Below, in pieces: positions 45,998-62,800 of a stretch of 64,000 nucleotides of DNA (the first letter of the stretch is position 1; the number at the start of each line of letters is the position of its first letter). The DNA is from Tubulanus polymorphus. Taxonomy: Eukaryota; Animalia; Nemertea. Under the pieces are notes generated by a model. That model was not told the DNA's origin, ran no database searches, and saw only the letters and a program-made list of their open reading frames with translations. The stretch is taken from positions 15,384,655 through 15,448,654 of the forward strand of contig NC_134033.1 in the NCBI RefSeq assembly GCF_964204645.1, written 5' to 3'. The translations under genes were made by a program, and so were the position numbers.

Positions 45998-46016
45998 TTT
46001 TGTACCTTTGTAAATA

Positions 46017-46400
46017 GGGGCACTAGATCCCAGTGCAGTTGTAGGGCACTTGATCGGAGTGAAGCAATAAGGGCACTAGATCCCAGTGCAGTTGTAGGGC
46101 ACTTGATCGGAGTGAAGCAATAAGGGCACTAGATCCCAGTGCAGTTGTAGGGCACTTGATCGGAGTGAAGCAATAAGGGCACTAGATCCCAGTGCAGTAA
46201 TAGGGCACTTGATCGGAGTGAAGCAATAAGGGCACTAGATCCCAGTGCAGTAATAGGGCACTTGATCGGAGTGAAGCAATAAGGGCACTAGATCCCAGTG
46301 CAGTAATAGGGCACTTGATCAGAGTGAAGCAATAAGGGCACTAGATCCCAGTGTAGCTGTAGGGCATTTGGTCGAAGGGCAGCAATCGGGGCACTTGGTT
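46017..46400. repeat. 53-bp minisatellite (about 7 copies; dimer of 26/27-bp AGGGCACT subunits)
   Basis: AGGGCACTAGATCCCAGTGCAGTTGTAGGGCACTTGATCGGAGTGAAGCAATA repeated. Confidence 0.93.
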
Positions 46401-47823: not shown

Positions 47824-50800
47824 TTAATAATTCTGCGGCCCGATCGTAGCTGAAAAATAGAAATGAAAATAAACGTCAAAATTCCAGAAAAGCTTGTGTG
47901 CGTTCAACCAAACATCAATTGGTATGATATCTAAAGTATAAGAACTACAGTCAAACCCCGATATACCGCCCTCCCATTTACCACCACCCCGCCTACCGCC
48001 AGGTTTTCTCAATGTACATCTCAATACAAATACATAATAAAACACCCCCGATATACCACCATACTCTCTATACCGCCTAAATCGTTCTGCACCGATGTGG
48101 GCGCAGTATATTTCGGGGGCTTGACTGTATAACAGTGAAAGTCACGAAGTCATCATTATGTCGATGACCGATCCAAATCATGATTGACCCGTAGTAAAAT
48201 GGAATTGGAAATACAAAACTTGGAAATAAAAAAATATAGATGACTTAGCAAAATTACAAAAGTTATACTTAGTAAATTGGATTGGAAATAGTATACAAAT
48301 TGCGGCTAAAAGAAGAGACAACTTCAATACTGTGATGAATTATCGAAATGAAGACTAACACACTTTAGTAAATTGGATTAAAAATATGAAATAGAGATGA
48401 CTTAAGTGATCTGGACCCGGTTCCACAGTTGTGAGTTAGAGTTAACTCTGAGTTAAAGTTAGTTCATTTTCAATTAGTTAACTCAGAGTTAAACCTTAAC
48501 TCAGAACTGTGGAACTGGACCCTGATGATTTATTTGACTTGATTTGATTTATGTGATTGATTTACCGAGTGCGACTGTATTACCTACCAGTTTGAACCGG
48601 TTTCGTCGTCGGTTTTACGATCTGTGGTTGTTTTTTCATGATCAACGAAGCGGCCCAGTTGACTTTCATTGCAGACGGAATATCGTAAACTAGACCTCTA
48701 CTCCTCGCATCGTGCACCAGATTACACCAATATTCATTAAACACCTACAAACGAAATAACTTTTTTATTTCCACAGCAAAATCTTAGATCATATATGATG
48801 TATAAGTATTGATCATGAAAATTTAAACCCGCTCAACTGTGGAACTGGATTCAGAGTCAAATTAAACCCACACAACTGTGGAACTGGATCCAGAGTCAAA
48901 CTAAACCCACATAAATGTGGAACTGGATCCAGAGTCAAATCAAACCCACTCAACTGTGGAACTGGACCCAGAGTCAAACTAAACCCACATAAATGTGGAA
49001 CTGGATCCAGAGTCAAATCAAACCCACTCAACTGTGGAACTGGGCACAGAGTGGAATTTATTCCACATAACTGTGGAACTGGGTTCAGAGTGGAATTAAT
49101 TCCACACAACTGTAGAACTGGGTTTAGGGTGGAATTAAACCTACACAACTGTGGAAGAGGGTCCAGAATCAAATTTAACCCGCACAACAGTGGAATTGAA
49201 ACTACACCATTGTGGGGAACTGTCAAATTAGATCGACACAACTGTGGAACTGGGTACAGGATTTAAGTTCCACAGTTCCTTGTTTCCCAATCCGAACTGA
49301 ATGTACCCCTAATCAATACAATGGACTTACAGGATCAGTTTTTGAGAAATGACCGACGATATACAACCCATATTTACATCTAGTTAAAGCAACATTCAAA
49401 CACTTTTTCATTGACAAAAACCTGAAAACAACCAAAACAAAACTGAACAAAGTCAAGAGAAATCTACCACGTCAGGTCACAAGGACAGTCCAATGCCGCA
49501 TATTTAAACATGGTCCCTACAAATCAGTCATTCCTGGATATAAGGAGTTTTAAAGGAGAACATTTTTAAATTTCGAGGAAGCGTCTGCATCACTTTCATT
49601 ACTTCTTTATTTAGAATAAATTACTATATTAAAAATCCAGGTCCCAACTGTATCAATTCCTATTTCTCAAAAAAATAAGAAGTTTTTGGGACATTTTGGT
49701 AAAATAAAAGGAGTTTCAGGCACTTTTAAAAGCATTTTCTGTTTTGAAGGAGTTTTGGAGGAATTGAGGAGTCGTAGGGAACCCGTTTATAATGTGTCAC
49801 ACGTACCCTCTACTCGGCGTTTTCGCTATCGTTTTAACGCAGCTCAAAATGGCGTACGATTTTTCATGAACGGGAAGATTATCATCGGTGCAAACATCGA
49901 CGACGACATCGCTGAAAATAAACCAAAAATCGAGTTAGAAACTGATGATCCGGAACTGATGCGGACTTGGCGCGGACCTGATCCAGTTCCAGTTCCACCG
50001 ACGGACAGATGGACGACGTAATAGCCCGCTGGGACTTCAGTCCCAAGTGGGCTAAAAATGGCTAAAGTTTGATTTGTTGTCCTCATTGAAGTGACCACAA
50101 TAGTACAGTCAAGCCCCGATATACCGCCCACATCGGCGCAGAACGATTTTGGTGGTATAGAGAGTATGGCGATATATCGGGGCTGTTTAACTATGTATTT
50201 GTATAGAGATGTACATTGAGAAAACCTGGCGGTAGGCGGGGGTGGCTGTAGATGGGAGGGCGGTATATCGGAGGTCGACTGTAACTAACCAAAAATCTGA
50301 GTTAAGCTTTTTTCCGTGAACTTGGACCGAGAGCGTAGTTTCTGCTGTACCTGTTTTGCAGTTTCGCGTCGATGAAGCGTCTCTGAGCGGAATAAGGCGT
50401 TACGACGACGATGGACGACGGCTGAGTTTGAGCGAGAAGATTCTTAACGAGTTCGACGACGAACACGGCCTCATCTTCGTTTATAACGTCCCTGAATAAA
50501 ACGACGATTAGAAATTAGAGTCGAAATTTCGAACGGATTTCGATGAGGGCCACTTTCTGCCAATTTACAAATCCCCTCAGTTTTCCCTGATTTTTCCATG
50601 TGATCACGCACAAAACTCCCTCTGAGTAAATCAGAGAAATTTATAGGTTTCAAATGTTACAATTCATTCATTTTTTAGTGAATCACGAACTAATAGAGAA
50701 ACACGTGGTCAATAGCTTTATCCAAACTCCCTGAGTTTTTCAAGTTTTTTTTGGTAAAATTCCAAATTCCCTGGGATTTTGGTAATATTCATAAAATTCT

Positions 50801-53800
50801 ATGATTTAATTCTAGATTTTTCTGATTTCCCCGAGTTTTTCCATGATTTTCAGGTGAGGTCAGATGGCAATCGATCCAGTTTCCACTTACCCGAGATGAT
50901 GTTTCTGAGACGAGTAAGGCAGGTTGTATATTAGATAGGGTTGCATCATTTGCCTGTCGTGCCACGGAATCAATCGCCTGTGAATAAGAATTCATTCGTT
51001 TTAACCCTTTCAGTGCGTCTACACCGCAGTGCGGTGTACAAATCAGTGATGGATTTTGCTAGTACACCGCACTGTGGTGTATTGATGTCATTAGTAATTA
51101 CTAATTATCTCTCTTGAAAAATGGCAGCACGTGTCAAACATAGTGAATTACTAGTAACTAACGATACACTGCACCGCGGTGTAGACGCATTATAGCGGTA
51201 TTCCCGTTATTCAACACACTAGGGTGGAATTCTTTTAAATTATCTAATCATCTCCAGCACTATAGGGTATTGATAAGTCAGCACTGAAAGGGTTAAAGAT
51301 TAGGGTTAACATTTTTCAAAAATTATTCAAACTTAGCGAGTAGACACACCTTGATGTCAACATCTGCGATTGGTAGAAATATCGATTCAGATATCTGGTT
51401 AACTCGACGTTCATTCGGTACTGCTCCGTTAGTTTCATTATCGGTCCCGATGATCGACGCGTTGGCGTGAAAATACTGACCAATCGTTCAAATAACGACT
51501 GGTCAAATATTTTATTTCTGGCATCCTGTTTAAAATGAGAAGAGACACGTTAGCATCACAGTAGTCCGATAACCACCACTCACACGTGGTGAACGGGTTA
51601 TAGGATAAAAGCCCACTATGTACGATTAAAAGAATTTAAAATCGAGAATCTATTTCTAAAATGTAAAAAACACGACGTTTCGATCTCACACTAGAGATCA
51701 TCGTCAGGTGTGAGATATTGACTAAAAACTGGGGTATATATATATATAGAGGAGAACAGGTTAATCGAGTAAAATAGTGAGTGAGTAAATAATTAGTGTT
51801 AGCATCATACAGTATCAATCTGCAGCCTAGAACCTACAGCCATTCGGCAGCCTAGAACCTACAGCCACTCTGTAGCCTAGAACATGCACAAACTCAAGAC
51901 AATCTGCTGCCGGGATCAATCTACAAGGTTTAATGTAAATTCACCTCAAATATTATTTTAGGAGACCCTGAGAACACATCACCAAACATGACTAGTTTCG
52001 ACACTCCGAACTGAACTGGAAGAAGAGTCTGTAACTCCGTCAAATTGCACGCCTTTAAAATACAAAACGAAACAAGCATCAAAACCCATGCGAGGTCAAT
52101 GTCAGGTGTATGTGAAGTGTATGTGAGAGGTATGTCAGGTGTATGTTCGGTGTATGTTTGTTGTATGTCTGTTGTTATTGAAGTGTATGTTTTATTTGAG
52201 GTGTATGTCTGGTGGATTTGTGGTGTATGTCCGGTCTATGTGAGGTGTCTGGTGTGCGTGAGGTGCATGTCTGTTGTCTCAAAGGAATAGGTCTGGTGTA
52301 CGAGACGTGTATGTTTGGTATATACGAGGTGTATGTCTGTTGCATGTGAGGTGTATGGTAATGTATATGTGAGATGTATGTCAAGTGTATGTTGAGTGTA
52401 TGTCTGGTGTACGTGAGGTGTACGTGAGATGCACTCACCTGATCAATAATCGCGCAGTCGAAATTCAAATCTGGTTCGTTTTCTAACAATCGTCGCAGTT
52501 TGAACACAGAATCGCCCGTTAACGATACGCAAATAACGTGACTCATTTCTATGATTTTAATTCTATGCGAATTCAACGTTTCTTCACTCTACAAAACAAT
52601 ACACGTTCAAATACTCCGATCAGTTAGCGATCGATGATGTCATAGGGGGAACTCAAGGTCAAAGGCGTCCCCAGGAATTTTCATGGGAGGTTCGAATAAG
52701 CATCTATTCAGTATCCATGCACAATGTCTGATGGGCCTCCCCCCAAAAAATTTTTTGAAAATTGGAAGCTTTAGACGTTTTCCAGGCTCTAAATGAATCA
52801 TTTAGAGATAAAAGACTAGTCAAGAAAAATCTTAACCATTGATAACATAGAAATTTGAGAAGTCAGCTATCTCGAAAAGGGGATGCGTCTGCTACCCTCG
52901 CACCCCCCCCCCTTGGGGACGCCTACAATGGAGGTAGTCATCTTTGTGAAAGGGCGAATAAAATAAATCACTCAGCGATTTAATGCGATCATAAGGGGAA
53001 TATAACAGGTATGAAGGTCTTTACATAGACTAAGTATGGTAGGCAATGTGATGATGTCATAAGAGGATCTTAAGGGAGCAGCCATATTTTCTAGAAGAGT
53101 CAATAAGTCTAAATTACGGAAAACTGTTGAAAGTTCTGCAGAACGAACTACTACACAATTGGATGATGTCAAAGGGAGATTTAAGGAGGTGACCATCATG
53201 ATGTGACTGACAAACACATGATGTCATAGGGGGATTTACGGAGACAGCCATCTCTTTTGTAGAATGTTCAACAAACACATTTCGATCAGTCTGGTCTCTC
53301 TACGTACTGGAGGGTCTGTTTTGAAAGTTTTTTCGATGAGCGCCTTTTCTTTCTTTTTCGCATTGATTTCTCTTTCAATGTCGGACGCCTAAATTTACAA
53401 ATTTCAATACGAAAAATTAGTTTCGAGTCTCCAAATAAATTCCGTCAAAAAAATGTAATACTTTAACCCTTTCAGCCGTAATATACCCGTAATTCAACAC
53501 CCTGGAGTGGAATTTTCCAGAATGTACAAATTATCTCCAGCACTTCAGGGTATCAATTGTTAGCACGGAAAGGATTAATCATAAATCTAAGAGAATATTT
53601 TCCGAAAATGAATGTCAGATATTTTTTTTACCAAGCGATGGTGATTTTTGCTCATCAAGTCGTGGTACACAGTCGACAGTGCAGTGATCTTAATGTCAAG
53701 TGCATTTACACTTACTATGCTGCTGCTGCTGCTGCTGCTACTGCTGCACTTTACACTGCTGCTGCTGCTGCTGCTGTTGGCGTTGTTCTCCGATACAACT

Positions 53801-56800
53801 AGATTGTAATCTGTAAATAAATCAAAAAGTTGAAATAATCTGCTGATTTTGTTTAATGTCTGGTGTTTGTAGTTCATTTTCAATAAGAAATGTCTCAGGT
53901 GAAGTACTGAACACATGTGAAGTGTGGACGATCAGTTTTTGAAAGTGTGCTGATTAAATGGCTGATATCTGGGGTTTGTAGTTCATTTTCAATTAAAAAT
54001 GTCTCAGGTGAAGTACTGAACACATGTGAAGTGTGAAAGATCAATGTGTGCTAATAAAATGTCTAATGTTTGGTGTTTGTAGTTCATTTTCAAGAGATAT
54101 ACATGTACAAACCTTTCATGGCTAACTCATCCAGATAAACAACATTCACCCGGCTATTGGCGCTACATCTGCCTACCCTGACTACCTTTAACAGCGCCGA
54201 CTCGGACATCCCTAAGAAACCAAGACGCACAAGTTGAACATAACAATAGTCTCTTTACTGGTCCTAAAACGGCGGGTCGCGTATCTTCCCAAAGTTAGCA
54301 ACATTTTCAAATAGTTTTCTACTTACGTTTTTTTACTTGTTTGTTGCGTTCGGCTAGAAGTAACGAAGTCATGTAATCGGCGCTCTCCTCACACGCGCTG
54401 CACAGTAAAATCCTAGCGTTGTTTTTTTTCTATATTATAAGAAAGGGTCAAGTCATTTGATAATGTGATAAAAGATCTTTTGTAAATAGGTCATCACCTT
54501 TCCGGACCCAGTAGATTCCTAACTCTAGATCGATTCGAATTTTTGTTCAAAGTTAAGGCGATATAATATGAGTTATAGACAATGGAATCTAATTCACATT
54601 CTGGAGTTGCAACGGTTATAAATTTCAGGATTCTCGCGTTCAAGTTTAACCCTTTCAGTGTCGACTAATCAATACCCGTATAGTGCTGGAGATAATTTTA
54701 AAATTTTGAAAAAATCCACCCCTTGTGTGTTGAATAACGGGAATACCACTAAAGTGCGTCTACACTGCGGTGTATCGTTAGTAACTAATATTTCACTATG
54801 TTTGACAGGTGCTACCATCTTTCAATAGAGATAAACTAATTACTAATTACATCAATACAGCGCAGTGCAGTGTAATAGCAAAATCCATCACCGATTCATA
54901 CACCGCACTGCGGTGTAGACGCATTGAAAGGGTTAAGAGAAGTATATCCCATTTTACCTGTACGATCTGTTTGGCTAAACCGACAGCGCAGCGAGTTTTA
55001 CCGGTTCCCGGAAAGCCCTGCACTAGAACGCACTTGGGTCGACTCTCGTCGTTTAATACGCCGTGCAACGACACCTGAATCGCAACCATTTGTGATTTAT
55101 TAAACCACGACTGAAACGTAAAAGAGACATCTTTCAATTTGAAATTGAAAGCCAATTGTTTCAATTTACCTAATTTCGAGGGACAGTTCTGCGAAGGTCG
55201 GATAATTGAAACAGTGAAACAGTGAAAATCAAAACTGCATAAATCTCAGAACGAAATTCAATTTAAATAGACTGTTTAATGATATAAGCAGTGAATCAGC
55301 ATTGATAAATTTGCGGAAGTATGTTAAATCAGGGTTTGAATATTGTACGTGATTTGATGTTTGAAAGATTAGAAAATTACACCAAAATTAAGCTTCAATT
55401 TTCTGTATTTTTTGGGGGGATCGAAAGCTTTGCAACTTCGGCAGCTATTACAATGCCATACACTTAACAATGAATGCAGTCCCTCTAAAATTCCAGCACA
55501 TGAAGATCACTGATATTGGCAATGATGGCAGAACTGGAACTATGAGAATTGGAATTTGTAATCGGCAGTGAGCGCATTAGCCGCTGGGATATGATTAAGT
55601 CAAAACTAATCGATGAAACTGAATAATAAATTTGGGCAAAGTGATTTGCCTCGAAAACTGGAGCTTGTTGGAAAGGGCATTGCTAACAAAGGTAAACCCA
55701 AAACTCACCAGTAAACTGTAATTATTAAACGCTGCAGTTTCTAGGAACGTATCAACAAACAGACGACTTTTCAGCAACGCGGGAGCGAGGCTCGAACGCT
55801 CCATCGATCGTAGAGCCTCGATCTGAGATAGACCGTTGCAGATGTCGACGACCGGATTCAGTTTCAGACGTACGTTTAACGGGTACGGATAGTCGCGCCA
55901 CGAGCGGATCTTCACGTCGAAACTGATGAATAGCAATTCGCAGTCGGCAACCAGCGCTGTAAATAATCACAATACGCGAGATTTGGTTTTACTGACTGGT
56001 ATTACCTTTAACCCGGGGGGGGCTAACTTAATTCATTTTCAATTTAGTTAGCCCCATGGGCCAGTTGCACAGTCGTGGCTTAAGTCCAAAAATGATCTTA
56101 AATCTAAAGACTGGTCTTAAGTTGTTAGATTGGCTATAGAACGAAGTTGGTCTTAGACTGGTCTTAAGTCTAAGCCTTGACTATGCAACCTGCCCCAGGG
56201 TTAAAGGTAATTCCGGCCTATAAAACCGGTGCCTGGATTCAGGACAGATTGGAGGGTTCAACAAAATTTCTTATCTTAATTTATCCCTTTGCCCCTGAAC
56301 AAAAACCTTTCTGAAATTTTTTAGAAAACTGGACCGTAGTTTAACAGAAAGTGCCCTCGAAGGATATTTTTGTAGACATGAAGCGTCATTGCTTTTCGAG
56401 GATCCCATGAGGATCGCCAACCAGTGAGGTAGAGAGGAATCTTACCATCAGCCTCATCCCGACACAGCCAGGGCAGTCTGCCGACATTCGCGTGTGTTAA
56501 TGCCTCCGTTTTCATAGATTCCACGAATACAAAAGTCAACCGTTTCTGCTGCTGTTTCTGCTGCTGTTTCTGCTGCTGTTTCTGGTTTGATGTTGATTCT
56601 AAACGTGTCGTCCCGATGTCACCGACAGATAACGCATCACGACCACTCTTACTGTAACCTAAATTACACAGTTACCCCCTCTGAACCTCAGCCCCAGTCC
56701 AGGGGCCGGTTGCATAGTCATGACTTACACTTAAGACCAACTTAGCCAATCTAACAAGTTAAGACCAGTCTTAAGATTTAAGACGATTTTTTGACTTAAG

Positions 56801-59800
56801 TCATAACTGTGCAACTGGCTCCAGGAGCTGGTTGCATATTCATGGCTTCGACTTAGAGCAGTAGCAAACACTAAACACTCCAGACCAGTCTTAAAACCAC
56901 ATAACTTTTGTACTTAAATCTTGACTATAGAACCGGCCACAGAACCGGTACGTACCGTAACATCTGTAAGTCATCAATCTTCCTCTGGTAGTTTTATGGA
57001 TCTCGCGCGACAGACAAAAATGAATCGTTTCACGGCATTGATTACGTTGTTTTTTCCATGATGAATAAATCTACAAAACAATGACAAAAATCTACAATAA
57101 ATGTGCTATACAACTATATACTCACCCTCTCCCTCTCCTGGCTCTCCCTCTACCTCTCCTGGCTATCCCTCTCCCATTCCTTTTCCCTCTCTCCCTCTCC
57201 TGGCTCTCTCTCTCCCTCTCCTAGCTCTCCCTCTCCCTCTCCCTCTCCTGGCTCTCCCTCTACCTCTCCTAGCTCTCCCTCTCCCTCTCCCTCTCCTGGC
57301 TCTCCCTCTACCTCTCCTAGCTCTCCCTCTCCTGGCTCTCCCTCTCCCTCTCCTGGCTCTCCCTCTCCTAGCTCTCCCTCTCCCTCTCCCTCTCCCTCTC
57401 CTGGCTCTCCCTCTCCTAGCTCTCCCTCACCCTCTTCCACTCCCTCTCTCCCACTCCCTATCTCCCTCTCCTGGCTCTCCCGCCCCCTCTCCTGGCTCTC
57501 CCACTCCCTCTCCCTCTCCTGTAACTCCCTCTCCCTCTCCTAGCTCTCCCTCTCTCTCTCCCACTCCCTATCTCCCTCTCCTGGCTCTCCCGCCCCCTCT
57601 CCTGGCTCTCCCACTCCCTCTCCCTCTCCTGGCTCTCCCTCTCCTAGCTCTCCCTCTCCTTCTCCCTTTCCCTCTCTCTATCCCAGCTCTCCCTCTCCCT
57701 CTCCTCTCTAATGAATGACTGTATCAGTGATACTCACTGTTTCCCACACGTTTAATTCAACTACTTTGAACATAATGCCGACGTATTCGTCCAGATTATC
57801 GTATTCCTTCAGTATCGGTAGACAATTCGCGTTGTAAACATCGGGCGGAGGCACGTCGCAGCCCTTCTTCATATATCCATCTAAATACATTACACAAAAC
57901 ATAGGCAACAATACTAGAAGATAACATACGGACGTTATTGGTTGTATAATAGGCCTAATATATCGTTTTTCAGCAAAAAGCTATAAGAGATTTCAAAAAC
58001 GAAGCACACAATCTCTCTGTTCTAAACCGTTGCACAATAGTGACTTCGTTCTAGACCAAATAATGACTTTGCACAATCATCATTTGGTTCTAAAAACTGA
58101 TGAAAAATTAGAGATTCGCTTTTAAACTGGTGCAAGTGATGATTATAACTAGGTTACTAAGTTTCTGAAGAGAGGCAAAATCATGATTTGGTTCTAAAGA
58201 GACAGTGAACACCAAGTAAACACCTTCAGTGAACACTTCATACAACGAACACCATGTGAACACCTTCATTTAGTGAACACCATGTGAACACATTCATTTA
58301 GTGAACACCAAGGGGCCCAAAGCATTCCAAACTTTACCGAATTTTAACATTCTAATTTTAAGAATTGCGTACATACGGGTTGGAGTTCCCTCCCCACATC
58401 ATGATGGGTGCGTTGAATGGTGCCTGAAATTAACTAGTAAAGATTAAGAAAGTGACCGAGGACAGCCCTGTATGGACACCACTACCACACACAAACCCAG
58501 AAACAGGGAAATAGACACACGAACACACACATGGATGAAATACAGCGGAAATCCAACACCTATCAACACACTGAAATCTACATACCACAACGATCCTTAA
58601 ATTCAAAACAAACATCTTCAAATTAATCTTAGCAAAGCAAAGTCTTTATATCTTTACAGAGAAAATGGTTAATTCATCTAATCAGGTCAGTCGCTGGTTG
58701 GGGGAGGCATTTAAACTGATTGTATTACTTGAACGTGGCAGGATCTTGCGAAACCATTAGGTTTGAATCCGTACAGAGGGAGGATTGTTTGAATCCCTGC
58801 AGATGGAGGATTGTTTGATTCCCTACAGAGGGATGATTGTTTGAATCCCTACAGAGGGAAGATTGTTTGAATTCATAGATAGGGAGGATTGTTTGAATCC
58901 CTACGAAGGGAAGATTATTTGAATCCCTATAGAGGATTGTTTGAATCCGTAGAGATGGAGGATGATTTGAATCCCTACAGAGAGAGGATTGTAGCCCAAC
59001 ATCTGATTTTAGAGATAACAGTTATAGGCTACCGTGGACTGAGAAAGAACTGTGGAATAAGATACAGATTGATTTAGAAAGTCTTACGTTGTTCGGCGAG
59101 CCATTCCGGTCTCCAGAGTAGAACTTTCTCCAATAAACTCGTCTGATTGATCGGAGTCGAGAGAACGACCGACGGACGACTCCCATTCTGTTCGTTCCGT
59201 TGACTGTCGGAGTCGATGTGAGTCTCGATATACCGCGGCCGAGGCAATTCTGAATCCAAAAATCTAACGCGCTTTTTAACGGGCGCACGCGCGCGATCGT
59301 CGTCGTCGCCGACAGACACCGCTTGATTCCGATCAATGTCGACTGAATCCATTTGATTCCGATCAATGTCGACTGAATCCATTTGATTCCGATCAATGTC
59401 GACTGAATCCATTTGATTCCGATCAATGTCGACTGAATCTATTTGATTCCGATCAATGTCGACTGAATCCATTTGATTCCGATCAATGTCGACTGAATCC
59501 ATTTGATTCCGATCGATGTCGACTGAATCTGTTTGATTCCGATCAGGTTCAGATTTCGACTTCACGTCTGTTCGGTTGTTCATATCAATCACTGATAATT
59601 CGTTATCGTTAATGATATTTGGAGCAGACGGATTTTCGGTCGCTTTCGACTGACCCTCATCCGCGCGTGACGGTAACCGATGATCGTCTAACGATTGTTG
59701 CCTCGGAGACGGCAGTCTATCCAAATCCACGCAACGTAACAGCGATGATTTCAACTTCAATTTCATAGCTGATGAAACGATTTTGTTCGAATGATCGCGA

Positions 59801-62800
59801 TCAGCGTTTCTCGGTTTCTCGATCGGTTTCTCCCGCCGCCCGTCATCGTCGTCGCGACATTTACCCGCATTCTCACAACGCGTCGACCGTTTCAACATTT
59901 TCTCGTTATTTTTGTCGTCGCGTCCTTTCATCGACAGTTTCGCAGAGTCTTTCGCGGCGCCGGCGACGACGCTGCGTCCGGTGCCGAGAATCTTTCGTAG
60001 CTGATCCGATTGCGTTGAACATTTGGCTAAATTCGAATCGATATCCGCACAGATTTTCGAGGCGTCTCTCGTTAAATGAGTCCGGTGTCGATCGAACGTA
60101 CGTCGCGAAGTCGTAGCCAACCCCGTCCACGACCTCCTCGTTTTAGCGGACATTTTATGGCGCCTTTTTTTAACTTTTCTCGAATCTCGAGATTCATCGG
60201 GTGCCCGGGTTTTACCCGGTGGTTCATGTACGTCAGCTTCATTCAACGGATCAGGTGCATCATCATGATAATCAGGTGAACTTAACACAGCAGGTGCATC
60301 AGCTTTGTCTAACAAAATTGATTCAAACGAATCTGTCTTCAAATCCGGTTCATCGGCTACGTCTAAAAGGGCAGATTCATCTGCCGTATCAAGTTCCTCT
60401 AGATCCTCGACCAAATCAGGTGCATCAGCTACATCTAACAGTTCCTCTGCCATGTCAGGTGCATCAGCTACATCTAACAGTTCTTCAGCATCTTCTACGA
60501 ACTCAGGAGCATCAGCTATATCTAACTGTTCCTCTGCATGATCCCCCAAATCGGGTAGATCATCTACGTCGAGATCAACAGATGCGAAAGACGCCGGTTG
60601 AGTTTGACTCCGAGCAGCAACAGCAGCAGCAGCAGGTGCGCAGCCACTGCGCGAGTGAAGTCTACGCATTAGTCGATCGTTTTGTTCGAAAACTACAGCG
60701 AGCGTCGAATCGAAACATTTGCCGATTTTCTCAGCGCGAGATAAAACCGAACCGTCGCTGTAGCTGTCTGACTGCTGGAACCACGTCGGATCACCGTTTA
60801 GCAGGTACCGCCGATCGGTACGACCCGCGTCATTCGAATTCCGTTTCGCATTTTGAACGTCGGAGTTTTTCGACGAACTACGACATTCATCGGCAAAAAC
60901 GTTTTGCTCCGGTTCGAGCAGAAAAGGATCCATTTTCGATTTCTTATTCCGAACAACGCTACACGCATTCGGCAAATTACGTTTATTATTATTATTATAA
61001 TTTTTATTATTATTATTATTACTATTATTAAGGCCAGAATCGTCGTTTTGTTGCGGTTCCGTTTTGACGTCCGGGAATGATTCGATGATGGCGTCCAATC
61101 GCGACGTGTTCGACCTCGTCGGTACGGTCGTCGCGACGATGTGGATAATAGGGGGCGCTGCCGGCGGCGTATTTTCTACATTTACGCCGTTATCACTGTT
61201 CTCCGCGCTCGAATTACTGAGATCCAGTAAATCGTTCTCATCCGGAAACCATTTTCCTGAATTGTCCGTCCCGTTTTCCCCTTGTCCCGCATTTGATGAA
61301 TCCGAATTCTTTATGAGAACATTCCTAAAAATTGCCGCCATATCATCCGTGACCCGTATTTTCAGGTTACCCGTCGCCGCGTTAACCCTTTCCGCGTTGT
61401 TCGCGTTATTTGGCGGAGGTTTTTTCGCGTTCAACTCCTCGCGTTCGTTCTTAGCGCTGTTGCCACGCAACGCGATCCGATCGATCGTCGCGCCGAGGTC
61501 GTCGACGTGGAAACGGAAATCTCGCGCGAGATCGTGAAGCGATATCGATTTTCTCGCCGGCGGACGCGAGTTCGTCCGGCACGAATCGTCGATATCCTGC
61601 CAGAGTTCGTAAGCGCTACGTTCGTTACCGGACTGTCTACGTTCAGGAGCGGCAGACACATTCGATACCATCCGTCTGCTAACGGTCTCCTCATTTTCCT
61701 CCTCCTCCTCGTCGGATGAAGAAATTAAAACCACGTCATCATCGTCATCGTCTTGAGAATATTTCGGTTCAATTTTGATATCGTCATCGTCAGAACTCGG
61801 TTCCGGATGCGGGCCAGGACTCGGCGGGTCCGGATGCGGGCCAGGACTCGGCGGTTCCGGAATCTCGTCGTCATCGCTGGGAACTTGGATAACTTCGGCC
61901 TAGAGTTAAATAAATCAATAAATTAATATCGAAATAAATTGCGATCCCAGTTTACTGTAATTGGTCAGGATTTTTTGTCATCACTCACTTCGATGGTTAA
62001 ATCGATAATTCCAGTATAACGCGTCGGCTTATTACATCTCCTTTTCAATCTATTTCCAGCAACATCCGTCTCCTTCTTCCCAGTGATGACCTTCACCTCA
62101 TCATCGTCATCATCATCGTCAATGCATAAAGGATCCATATCAGCGGTGTGCGCCGTCAACAAGTGTGTGCCATTATATCGGCGTGCGCCGTCTGAAAAAG
62201 TTTGAAGAAATATCATGATTATAGGCTTTTAAACCCCATCAGCAGCCAAAATTAGATACCACTAAAATAGCAGTCCAGTTACTGACTAAACTACCCCTAC
62301 AGTCCAGTGGCGTCGGAACCGCAGCGACTGCAGCCGCGGCAACAATTTACTGAATGACGTTTATTTTTCTCGTTGAAACCACGTTTTCGAAGAAATTAAG
62401 TTAATTCGCTGCAGCAATATTAAGAACCTTCAGAATCGGAATTTGGCCGCAGCAATCAAAAATTGCTTCGAATACGCCTGCAGTCCAGTTATAGTCAGAA
62501 CTGTCCATTTAAATATTTTTTTTTTTGGGGGGGGGGGAGAAATACAAAAAAAGACAGGTACGAAAAAGGGCAGGTCTAGTTAGGGGGGCATAGAACAACA
62601 CTTATATTTGCAAGGGCCATTTGTAGTGCACTTCTCCAAAATATCTGGGGGGCACCTAATTTAGTAGAAAGTTCTACGTGCCGAAAAAAGGACTCGATCG
62701 CTCTAGTTAGTTACCTAATCGTTGGTGGTAAGCTTTTTATAATCGGATGGGCTTATACCAACGTTAGCCTGGTTAGGGATGACAAGGACCAAAACACGGT

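What the first reader, a model, noticed from the sequence alone, without database searches (positions are those of the whole stretch)
49331..55110. Senataxin-like gene with a natural Walker-B E-to-Q substitution and concerted motif decay: a probable pseudo-helicase
Seen: Q motif (FNKSQ) and Walker A (GFPGTGKT) are retained. Motif Ia reads [11 protein letters not shown] (family consensus VCAPSNxAVD), Walker B reads IIDQ|ACNLTE across the 52439/52052 junction (consensus IIDEAxQxxE), motif [11 protein letters not shown] (consensus GDPxQLxP), motif [12 protein letters not shown] (consensus TVDxFQGREK) and motif [13 protein letters not shown] (consensus RRLNVAxTRA[KR]). The frame and splice sites stay intact over about 20 exons, so it does not look like a pseudogene. 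Known: E-to-Q in Walker B is the standard engineered ATPase-dead mutation. Inference: an ATP- or RNA-binding clamp or scaffold paralogue of Sen1/SETX.
Basis: partly seen in the sequence, partly recalled or inferred. Interest (0 to 1): 0.8.

Follow-up and report, generated by a model that had tools for sequence, protein, structure and literature searches.

The report
Catalytically dead senataxin-family gene
The only senataxin-type (Sen1/SETX) RNA helicase gene found in this ribbon-worm genome is intact over 19 exons but has lost the residues needed to burn ATP, so it most likely survives as a non-enzymatic "pseudo-helicase".

Summary
On the minus strand lies a phase-consistent gene of 19 exons: 62138..48583, 1772 codons, ATG to TAA, 18 GT-AG introns, no internal stop.

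Every quoted motif string is present. Walker B reads IID-Q (CAG 52441..52439, then GTGAGT) joined to ACNLTE at 52052.

The protein belongs to the UPF1-like SF1B helicases. It carries the N-terminal "brace" that defines Sen1/SETX.

It keeps 64 of 95 covered columns that are at least 90% conserved in SETX-like proteins. The losses cluster in:
- motif Ia (PSN>ACE)
- motif II (E>Q, Q>N)
- motif III (Q>S)
- motif V (GFQG>NLPV)
- motif VI (R>C)

None of 123 SETX-like proteins has DQ. The same E>Q change (E1591Q) kills yeast Sen1 ATPase and termination (PMC5452015).

One correction: no second, canonical SETX was found in the 268-Mb assembly. This looks like the sole family member, not an extra paralogue.

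Limits:
- The helicase-core tree is unresolved (long branch).
- No relatives of this gene were found.
- No reads or RNA could be checked.
- Whether it acts as a clamp or a scaffold is inference.

It is a new variant of a known kind, of moderate interest.

The parts
48580..62138 (-). Whole gene: 19 exons, ATG at 62138, TAA at 48582..48580, 1772 codons
   Evidence: Phase bookkeeping: all 18 introns GT-AG, no in-frame stop. Exon matches run in the same order as the SETX profile.
61989..62138 (-). Exon 1 (start codon, acidic N-terminus)
   Evidence: donor GTGAGT.
59088..61899 (-). Exon 2: 937 codons, D/S-rich and probably disordered. It has an in-frame 30-bp repeat (59323-59545). Its last 16 codons begin the brace ([16 protein letters not shown]).
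   Evidence: No Pfam family. No homologue found by word search.
61696..61734 (-). Hydrophobic-acidic motif [13 protein letters not shown] (SUMO-interaction-like)
   Evidence: Regex scan. The same kind of motif occurs in the Saccostrea, Ptychodera, Tachypleus and Uloborus SETX-like proteins. The SUMO reading is from general knowledge and was not tested.
57738..57880 (-). Exon 3: rest of the Sen1/SETX 'brace' and start of the stalk (..[18 protein letters not shown])
   Evidence: SETX profile positions 24-66, 16 bits. 0/1000 shuffles reach that score. Alignment A2. Only brace hit in the genome.
56956..57070 (-). Exon 4 (stalk/barrel region)
   Evidence: Phase-consistent splice sites. Its homology score is not above shuffles.
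56446..56658 (-). Exon 5 (barrel region, with an in-frame QKQQ repeat)
   Evidence: 14/1000 shuffles reach its score.
55709..55956 (-). Exon 6 (end of barrel/stalk, before the Q motif)
   Evidence: 2/1000 shuffles reach its score.
54958..55110 (-). Exon A: Q motif FNKSQ (55104..55090) and Walker A GFPGTGKT (55017..54994), both retained except P>F
   Evidence: 39 bits to the SETX profile. AAA_11 E=2e-4.
54327..54429 (-). Exon B: motif Ia decayed, CAPSNAAVD > CSACEESAD (54408..54376)
54113..54211 (-). Exon C: VRVG retained
   Evidence: 0/1000 shuffles.
53632..53810 (-). Exon D' (prong region, poly-Ser from AGC repeats)
   Evidence: phase-consistent.
53308..53388 (-). Exon D (prong region, charged helix)
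52439..52588 (-). Exon E: ends AIID-Q. Walker B Asp is kept and the catalytic Glu is replaced by Gln (CAG 52441..52439).
   Evidence: 15.7 bits to the SETX profile.
51945..52052 (-). Exon F: ACNLTE (Q>N) and motif [11 protein letters not shown] (Q>S, L>G) at 51983..51960
   Evidence: Ungapped 36-residue match to the SETX consensus.
51350..51525 (-). Exon G: motif IIIa/IV QYRM retained; the best-conserved exon
   Evidence: AAA_12 30.9 bits. 53 bits to the SETX profile. Best database hits are SETX-like.
50891..50977 (-). Exon H (QPYLIYNL)
   Evidence: phase-consistent only.
50351..50491 (-). Exon I (NEDEA...VVTPYSAQ)
   Evidence: AAA_12 35.3 bits. 33.8 bits to the SETX profile.
49807..49911 (-). 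Exon J: motif V decayed, TVDGFQGREK > [11 protein letters not shown] (49892..49860)
49331..49421 (-). Exon K: motif [13 protein letters not shown] (49405..49373). The first Arg is replaced by Cys; N, V, T and R are kept.
   Evidence: AAA_12 25.3 bits.
48583..48744 (-). Exon L: C-terminal SETX-type helix ([14 protein letters not shown]) and the stop
   Evidence: tblastn to Saccostrea SETX-like. 10 bits to the SETX profile, 0/1000 shuffles.

Best explanation
This is an intact gene of the Sen1/senataxin family (UPF1-like SF1B helicases), kept by selection, that has become a pseudo-helicase.

Shown:
- The reading frame, the splice sites, the fold-defining residues and the family-specific brace are all kept.
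- The residues that bind the nucleotide are kept: Q-motif Gln, Walker A Lys/Thr, Walker B Asp, motif IIIa/IV QYRM and motif VI Thr-Arg.
- The residues that hydrolyse ATP and couple it to movement on nucleic acid are replaced: Walker B Glu, motif III Gln, motif V GFQG, the first Arg of motif VI and motif Ia PSN.
- No second senataxin-type gene was found in the assembly.

Inferred:
- The protein can still fold, and may still bind ATP, but it cannot hydrolyse ATP or translocate.
- It therefore acts through binding, as a scaffold or adaptor. The likely surfaces are the helicase-shaped body and the long acidic N-terminal region with its SUMO-interaction-like motif.
- It does not remove RNA or R-loops by motor action.
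For: - Gene integrity: 19 exons, 1772 codons, 18 GT-AG introns, no stop.
- Family: AAA_12 hits on exons G, I and K in the right order, with a weak AAA_11 hit.
- Profile: matches to a SETX-domain profile run in gene order across 14 exons.
- Brace: the brace aligns, scores above all 1000 shuffles, and is the only brace hit in the genome. The brace is the feature that sets Sen1/SETX apart from related helicases (PMC5452015).
- Nearest relatives: in 1.84 billion representatives, the only real hits to exon G are SETX-like proteins.
- Pattern of loss: 64 of 95 covered conserved columns are kept, and the losses sit in motifs Ia, II, III, V and VI.
- Rarity: 0 of 123 SETX-like proteins has DQ.
- Experiment on a homologue: Sen1 E1591Q has no ATPase or termination activity (PMC5452015). 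SETX DE>AA has no ATPase activity (PMC10085699).
- No other locus: no other SETX-type locus was found.
Against: - There is no expression evidence.
- No orthologue from a related species could be found, so neither conservation of DQ nor dN/dS could be measured.
- The helicase-core tree does not place the gene inside the SETX clade with support. It sits on a long branch of 1.6-1.7 substitutions per site.
- By core score alone it is no closer to SETX than the IGHMBP2-like paralogue is.
- The single base that makes Q rather than E (C versus G) was not checked in reads.
- Absence of a second SETX rests on searches that score only the best candidates.
Confidence: 0.6

Rival explanations
1. It is still an active helicase or ATPase. 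Another residue or a bound partner supplies the catalytic base, and the diverged motifs reflect fast evolution of a working enzyme.
For: The nucleotide-binding residues are kept: Q motif, Walker A, Walker B Asp, QYRM and motif VI TR. The gene is clearly maintained.
Against: The exact E>Q change abolishes Sen1 ATPase and termination (PMC5452015). Four further motifs are hit at once. None of 123 SETX-like proteins tolerates Q here.
Confidence: 0.1
2. It is a dying gene: an unprocessed pseudogene, or a gene in the early stage of loss, that is no longer under selection. The lineage is simply losing senataxin.
For: Catalytic motifs have decayed. The branch is long. No transcript-derived fragment was found in the protein collections. 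No relatives were seen.
Against: 1772 codons and 18 introns carry no stop, frameshift or broken splice site, although about a third of otherwise conserved positions have changed. Under neutrality that much change would be expected to bring many stops and indels (inference). Two thirds of the conserved positions and the brace W/P/W residues are kept.
Confidence: 0.13
3. It is not a senataxin orthologue. It would be a separate, lineage-specific UPF1-like family that only resembles SETX, with true SETX lost or unassembled.
For: The core phylogeny is unresolved. Core profile scores are similar to those of non-SETX paralogues. No SEN1_N domain was found.
Against: Brace and C-terminal helix match the SETX profile. 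No other locus has the brace; the C-terminal part of the profile is also reached by the ZGRF1-, IGHMBP2- and UPF1-like loci. The best database hits are SETX-like. Mollusc, hemichordate and sponge SETX-like proteins also lack a SEN1_N hit.
Confidence: 0.12
4. The D-Q reading is an artefact of the gene model or the assembly: a wrong junction or a base error.
For: No reads or cDNA were examined.
Against: The donor CAG|GTGAGT and the acceptor with its pyrimidine tract are near consensus and in phase. No other in-frame choice gives E, and there is no alternative exon. The decay affects many separate codons in five motifs, so one base error cannot explain it.
Confidence: 0.05

Closest known systems
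Sen1 / senataxin (SETX), UPF1-like SF1B RNA/DNA helicases
   Same: - Same domain order: disordered N-terminal region, brace, stalk/barrel, RecA1 with prong, RecA2, C-terminal helix.
- The brace W-x-P-x-W ... PPP ... Y..Y...F...WE pattern is kept.
- The Q motif, Walker A, QYRM and motif VI TR are kept.
- The N-terminal hydrophobic-acidic motif also occurs in several SETX-like proteins.
   Different: - Walker B Glu>Gln.
- Motif Ia PSN>ACE.
- Motif III Q>S.
- Motif V GFQG>NLPV.
- Motif VI first Arg>Cys.
- None of 123 SETX-like proteins has DQ.
- Very long branch.
- No SEN1_N domain detected.
Engineered Sen1 E1591Q and SETX DE2181,2182AA mutants
   Same: The natural sequence carries the same motif II Glu>Gln change as Sen1 E1591Q. 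That mutant lacks ATPase and termination activity (PMC5452015). The SETX Walker B mutant lacks ATPase activity (PMC10085699).
   Different: Those are single-site laboratory mutants of otherwise canonical enzymes. Here the change is natural and comes with losses in four other motifs.
Described pseudo-helicases: MUT-15 (DEAD-box-like scaffold, bioRxiv 10.64898/2026.09.04.749402), Utp25 (PMC9539457), Deinococcus PriA (PMC4504706)
   Same: A helicase fold is kept while the ATPase motifs degenerate, and the protein is reused as a scaffold or RNA-binding platform.
   Different: Those belong to SF2 (DEAD-box-like Utp25 and MUT-15, and PriA), not the UPF1-like SF1B family. MUT-15 has also lost the Q motif and other ATP-binding motifs, whereas this gene keeps them.
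Spider 'probable helicase senataxin' paralogues (P0020, P0047, P0055, P0028)
   Same: These are SETX-like proteins with partial motif changes: DD in P0020, motif III Q>G in P0047 and P0055, motif V Q>H in P0028. They keep about 70% of conserved columns.
   Different: They are extra copies beside canonical FHA-type copies in the same genomes. Each has one or two changes, and none has DQ or the combined loss seen here.

Membership tests
UPF1-like SF1B helicases (Pfam AAA_11 + AAA_12) | AAA_12 (RecA2) domain match | tested here: met
   Exons G (30.9 bits), I (35.3 bits) and K (25.3 bits) match profile positions 2-51, 86-136 and 170-193 in order. The cut-off is 27 bits.
UPF1-like SF1B helicases (Pfam AAA_11 + AAA_12) | AAA_11 (RecA1) domain match | tested here: inconclusive
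   Exon A scores 21.7 bits and exon F 14.5 bits, both below the 27-bit cut-off when scanned exon by exon.
Sen1 / senataxin | N-terminal 'brace' that fastens RecA1, stalk and barrel, absent from related helicases (PMC5452015) | tested here: met
   The exon 2 tail and exon 3 align to the brace of 10 SETX-like proteins, with the conserved W, P, Y and W kept. The score is 16 bits, and 0/1000 shuffles reach it. It is the only brace hit in the genome. This is a sequence-level test only; no structure was made.
Sen1 / senataxin | Motif II (Walker B) D-E, with the Glu essential for ATP hydrolysis | tested here: not met
   The sequence reads D-Q (CAG 52441..52439). 122 of 123 SETX-like proteins have DE.
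Sen1 / senataxin | Canonical motifs Ia, III, V and VI | tested here: not met
   PSN>ACE, Q>S and L>G, GFQG>NLPV, first Arg>Cys.
Sen1 / senataxin | Q motif and Walker A | tested here: met
   FNKSQ and GFPGTGKT.
Sen1 / senataxin | Groups with SETX in a phylogeny of UPF1-like helicases | tested here: inconclusive
   The IQ-TREE and FastTree trees of helicase-core columns place it on a long, unsupported branch near the base. The outgroups were exon-wise composites of paralogues from the same genome.
Sen1 / senataxin | SEN1_N domain (PF12726) | tested here: inconclusive
   There was no hit anywhere in the genome, but the control search also found nothing. Mollusc, hemichordate and sponge SETX-like proteins lack this domain too in the precomputed Pfam lists.
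Sen1 / senataxin | Nucleic-acid-dependent ATPase and 5'-3' unwinding | not testable with these tools
   This needs purified protein. It is predicted to be absent, by analogy with Sen1 E1591Q (PMC5452015).
Pseudoenzyme (pseudo-helicase) | Fold-family membership with loss of catalytic residues, while the gene stays under selection | tested here: inconclusive
   Loss of catalytic residues is shown and the ORF is intact. Selection is inferred from that integrity. dN/dS and expression could not be tested.

The most novel reading that the evidence does not exclude
A metazoan lineage (this nemertean) has turned its only Sen1/senataxin gene into a catalytically dead protein that is still maintained. 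Senataxin would then have a selectable function that needs neither ATP hydrolysis nor translocation. In this animal, motor-driven R-loop removal and transcription termination would have to be done by other factors.
Probability: 0.35. Interest if true: 0.7.

Novelty: new variant of a known kind. Interest (0 to 1): 0.5.

Why it matters
Senataxin is studied mainly as a motor that removes R-loops and terminates transcription. Its loss causes human neurodegeneration (AOA2, ALS4).

A natural senataxin that is maintained but ATPase-dead, and that is the only copy in its genome, would amount to a natural separation-of-function experiment. It would point to a role that needs no motor activity, such as scaffolding, SUMO-linked recruitment or nucleotide-dependent binding. 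It would also show that an animal can do without senataxin's motor activity.

It would add a UPF1-like SF1B member to the short list of described pseudo-helicases.

If it is instead a gene in decay, it documents loss of senataxin in a nemertean, which is of narrower interest.

Tried and rejected
- **Word search with exon E.** No candidate shared enough words.
- **Word search with exon 2.** Nothing scored E<=0.001.
- **This genome in the protein collections.** No protein encoded by this gene came back from those searches or from the exon G representative search, so these collections could give neither expression evidence nor close relatives.
- **Exon-by-exon searches of solved structures.** They gave only weak hits (E 0.05-1) to UPF1/Nam7, Sen1, DNA2 and ZNFX1. 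That is too weak to assign a subfamily.
- **ESM Atlas with exon 3.** Nothing useful.
- **SEN1_N search in the genome.** It was blank, and so were its controls.
- **Search for a near-identical paralogue or a transposon-borne copy.** Rejected. The exons are unique in the genome. The many hits to the tail of the 132-aa ORF belong to an intronic interspersed repeat, not to the exon.
- **A small exon at 55188..55172.** Rejected because it breaks the reading phase. Exon 6 joins exon A directly.
- **Phylogeny of helicase-core columns.** Unresolved.
- **Joined model.** Exon pieces were aligned one by one. They were combined only as gapped rows inside a local script, for counting columns and building the tree.


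Full report
**Where and what**

The window is G000:C9:15384655-15448654 in a 268-Mb, 77-contig assembly. I did not check that. The feature lies on the minus strand.

**The observation**

Coordinates are on the minus strand.

| Motif | Sequence | Coordinates |
|---|---|---|
| Q motif | FNKSQ | 55104..55090 |
| Walker A | GFPGTGKT | 55017..54994 |
| Ia | [11 protein letters not shown] | 54408..54376 |
| Walker B | AIID-Q, Q = CAG | 52441..52439 |
| after Walker B | ACNLTE | starts at 52052 |
| III | GDVFSGSP | 51983..51960 |
| V | [11 protein letters not shown] | 49892..49860 |
| VI | [11 protein letters not shown] | 49405..49373 |

The CAG codon is followed at once by GTGAGT. The next exon starts at 52052, after ttttgtattttaaag. 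No other in-frame donor or acceptor yields D-E. A profile scan of all minus-strand open segments between 44000 and 62400 finds no second exon for motifs II or III.

**Gene model**

I worked out the splice sites by eye and checked them by phase bookkeeping. The gene has 19 exons:
- 62138..61989
- 61899..59088
- 57880..57738
- 57070..56956
- 56658..56446
- 55956..55709
- 55110..54958
- 54429..54327
- 54211..54113
- 53810..53632
- 53388..53308
- 52588..52439
- 52052..51945
- 51525..51350
- 50977..50891
- 50491..50351
- 49911..49807
- 49421..49331
- 48744..48583

Together they make 5316 nt, or 1772 codons. The gene starts at an ATG and ends at TAA. All 18 introns are GT-AG, and there is no in-frame stop. 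It misses the N-terminal half and the last exon.

**Family**

- **Pfam, exon by exon.** AAA_12 matches three exons in the right order. AAA_11 matches weakly.
- **Solved structures.** Single-exon searches give only weak hits to UPF1/Nam7, Sen1, DNA2 and ZNFX1.
- **Representative search.** I searched 1.84 billion representative proteins with exon G, the best-conserved exon. It returned two repeat artefacts that I inspected (P0001, P0003), one hit with no matched stretch that I did not inspect (P0002), and four real hits. All four real hits are SETX-like, with 38-46% identity. One of them is 'probable helicase senataxin' of the spider Uloborus.
- **SETX profile.** I aligned the helicase regions of ten SETX-like proteins from molluscs, a hemichordate, a sponge, a fish and arthropods (A1). 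The profile built from them matches the window exon by exon, in gene order, from position 1 to 761.
- **Outside the Pfam domains.** The exon 2 tail and exon 3 match on the N-terminal side, and exon L matches on the C-terminal side. Against 1000 shuffles each, no shuffle reached the real score for the exon 2 tail, exon 3, exon L, or exons C and J. For exon 6, 2 of 1000 did.

The N-terminal match is the 'brace'. Leonaite et al. describe it as a segment of about 50 residues that sets Sen1/SETX apart from UPF1 and IGHMBP2, and whose key residues are absent from related helicases (PMC5452015). The alignment shows two clear correspondences (A2):
- [16 protein letters not shown] lies under the mollusc LLVQLLKWNPVWLKEQE.
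- ..[34 protein letters not shown] lies under ..PPPDIEQEN..LP..AYSKFDDYIQLFTPHILMETWET.

**Is there a normal senataxin elsewhere?**

I searched the whole assembly with six queries:
- AAA_12
- AAA_11
- the spider senataxin
- the scallop senataxin
- the SETX-domain profile
- the brace profile

I fetched ten of the other UPF1-like loci in twelve 10-kb stretches. Nine carry canonical motifs. Their motif II-III signatures look like IGHMBP2, DNA2, UPF1, HELZ (two loci), ZGRF1, MOV10, AQR and ZNFX1 (five intronless copies in the genome, two of them fetched). The tenth locus, L010, matched none of the canonical motif patterns and stays unassigned; its one weak match to a senataxin query does not look SETX-like. 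I made these assignments from memory of family signatures, not with a tool. None of the twelve stretches matches the brace part of the profile. The brace profile hits only the window gene.

Within the sensitivity of these searches, this is the only Sen1/SETX-type gene in the assembly.

**Pattern of decay**

Of 106 columns that are at least 90% conserved in A1, the exon pieces cover 95 and keep 64.

| Kept | Lost |
|---|---|
| Brace W, P, P, Y, W | Walker A second position, P>F |
| Q-motif N and Q | Ia: PSN>ACE |
| Walker A GxPGTGK(T) | II: E>Q and Q>N |
| Ia: Asp | III: Q>S and L>G |
| VRxG | V: V>D and GFQG>NLPV |
| Walker B: D, A and the distal E | CVRA: R>K |
| III: GD | VI: first R>C and A>C |
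| QYRM | |
| TPY..Q | |
| V: T, D, E, K | |
| SCV | |
| VI: N, V, T, R | |
| C-terminal W, L, A, R | |

Some of the losses fall at exon edges that the aligner left unaligned. I read those by eye from an ungapped match.

None has DQ. Only a few spider paralogues show one or two motif changes. The median control keeps 92% of the columns and the lowest keeps 69%. The window gene keeps 67%.

**What the changes mean**

- The E1591Q change in motif II of yeast Sen1 abolishes RNA-dependent ATPase and transcription termination (PMC5452015).
- The DE>AA mutant of human SETX has no ATPase activity (PMC10085699).
- The Q-motif Gln and the motif IIIa aromatic residue bind the adenine (same paper, PMC5452015). 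Both are kept here.

So the sequence predicts a protein that folds like Sen1 and may still bind nucleotide, but that cannot hydrolyse it. Motifs Ia, III and V contact nucleic acid in this family (general knowledge), and they are among the lost ones. For that reason I rate a canonical RNA clamp as less likely than a scaffold.

The 937-codon exon 2 is D/S-rich with no Pfam family. It carries [13 protein letters not shown], a hydrophobic-acidic motif. The same kind of motif is seen in the Saccostrea, Ptychodera, Tachypleus and Uloborus SETX-like proteins. Its reading as a SUMO-interaction motif is my inference.

**Pseudogene or not**

About a third of otherwise conserved positions have changed, and the branch is 1.6-1.7 substitutions per site. 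Yet 5316 coding bases and 36 splice dinucleotides are intact. Under neutral drift that much change should have brought many stops and frameshifts. This is inference, not a measured test. I therefore rate decay at about 0.13.

**Weak points**

- No reads or RNA were examined.
- No relatives of this gene were found, so neither conservation of DQ nor dN/dS is known.
- The tree of helicase-core columns does not place the gene within SETX with support. The assignment rests on the brace, the C-terminal helix, the best database hits and the absence of any other candidate.
- I sent no joined protein to a search or fold tool, so there is no whole-protein search or structure model. The exon pieces were combined only as gapped rows in local scripts, for counting columns and for the tree.

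**Verdict**

The pseudo-helicase reading is the best supported (0.6). The gene looks like the only senataxin-family member of this genome rather than an extra copy. It is a new variant of a known kind.

Noticed in passing
window 54850-54957 (minus strand, intron after exon A); similar copies near 51000-51250 and 54660-54820: A very abundant interspersed repeat. Its translation (..[29 protein letters not shown]) gave 1945 first-look candidates across all chromosomes at 60-90% identity. It sits in several introns of this gene and could be mistaken for coding sequence.
   Followed up: partly
window 59323-59545 (exon 2): An in-frame 30-bp tandem repeat, 7.4 copies at 96% identity, that encodes [10 protein letters not shown] units. 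It looks like a recent coding-repeat expansion inside the disordered N-terminal exon.
   Followed up: no
window 52088-52428 (intron between the Walker B exon and the motif III exon): Almost the whole intron is a degenerate 11/22-bp repeat (ATGTGAGGTGT-like). It stays open in one frame, so the 137-aa ORF 52588..52178 runs through it.
   Followed up: no
window 57121-57708 (intron 3); 48823-49195 (intron before the last exon); 46013-46395 (downstream): Three arrays: a long CT-rich minisatellite (CTCTCC-based; periods 6, 21 and 48), a 39-bp array of 9.6 copies, and a 53-bp array of 7.2 copies at 95% identity.
   Followed up: no
G000:C3:24962609-24964597, C7:2848323-2850254, C7:17976550-17978838, C7:19052933-19055206, C11:4286197-4288437: Five intronless ORFs of 1772-2012 aa with canonical AAA_11 and AAA_12 domains and ZNFX1-like motifs (EEAAEVLEAH..GDHKQLRP). 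This is an expanded family of single-exon ZNFX1-type helicases in this genome.
   Followed up: partly
proteins P0020, P0047, P0055, P0028/P0029/P0034, P0057, P0061 (spider 'senataxin' paralogues): Spider genomes carry extra SETX-like copies with partial motif changes: Walker B DD; motif III Q>G; motif V Q>H; altered Walker A in P0057 and P0061. They keep only about 70% of conserved columns, so they may be a second, independent case of senataxin-family decay.
   Followed up: partly
L010 = G000:C4:24820000-24829999: A UPF1-like locus that matched none of the canonical Walker A, motif III, V or VI patterns used here (motif V region reads ..LTGKQFRAIFLSTVRT..). It could be another diverged helicase-like gene in this genome.
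   Followed up: no
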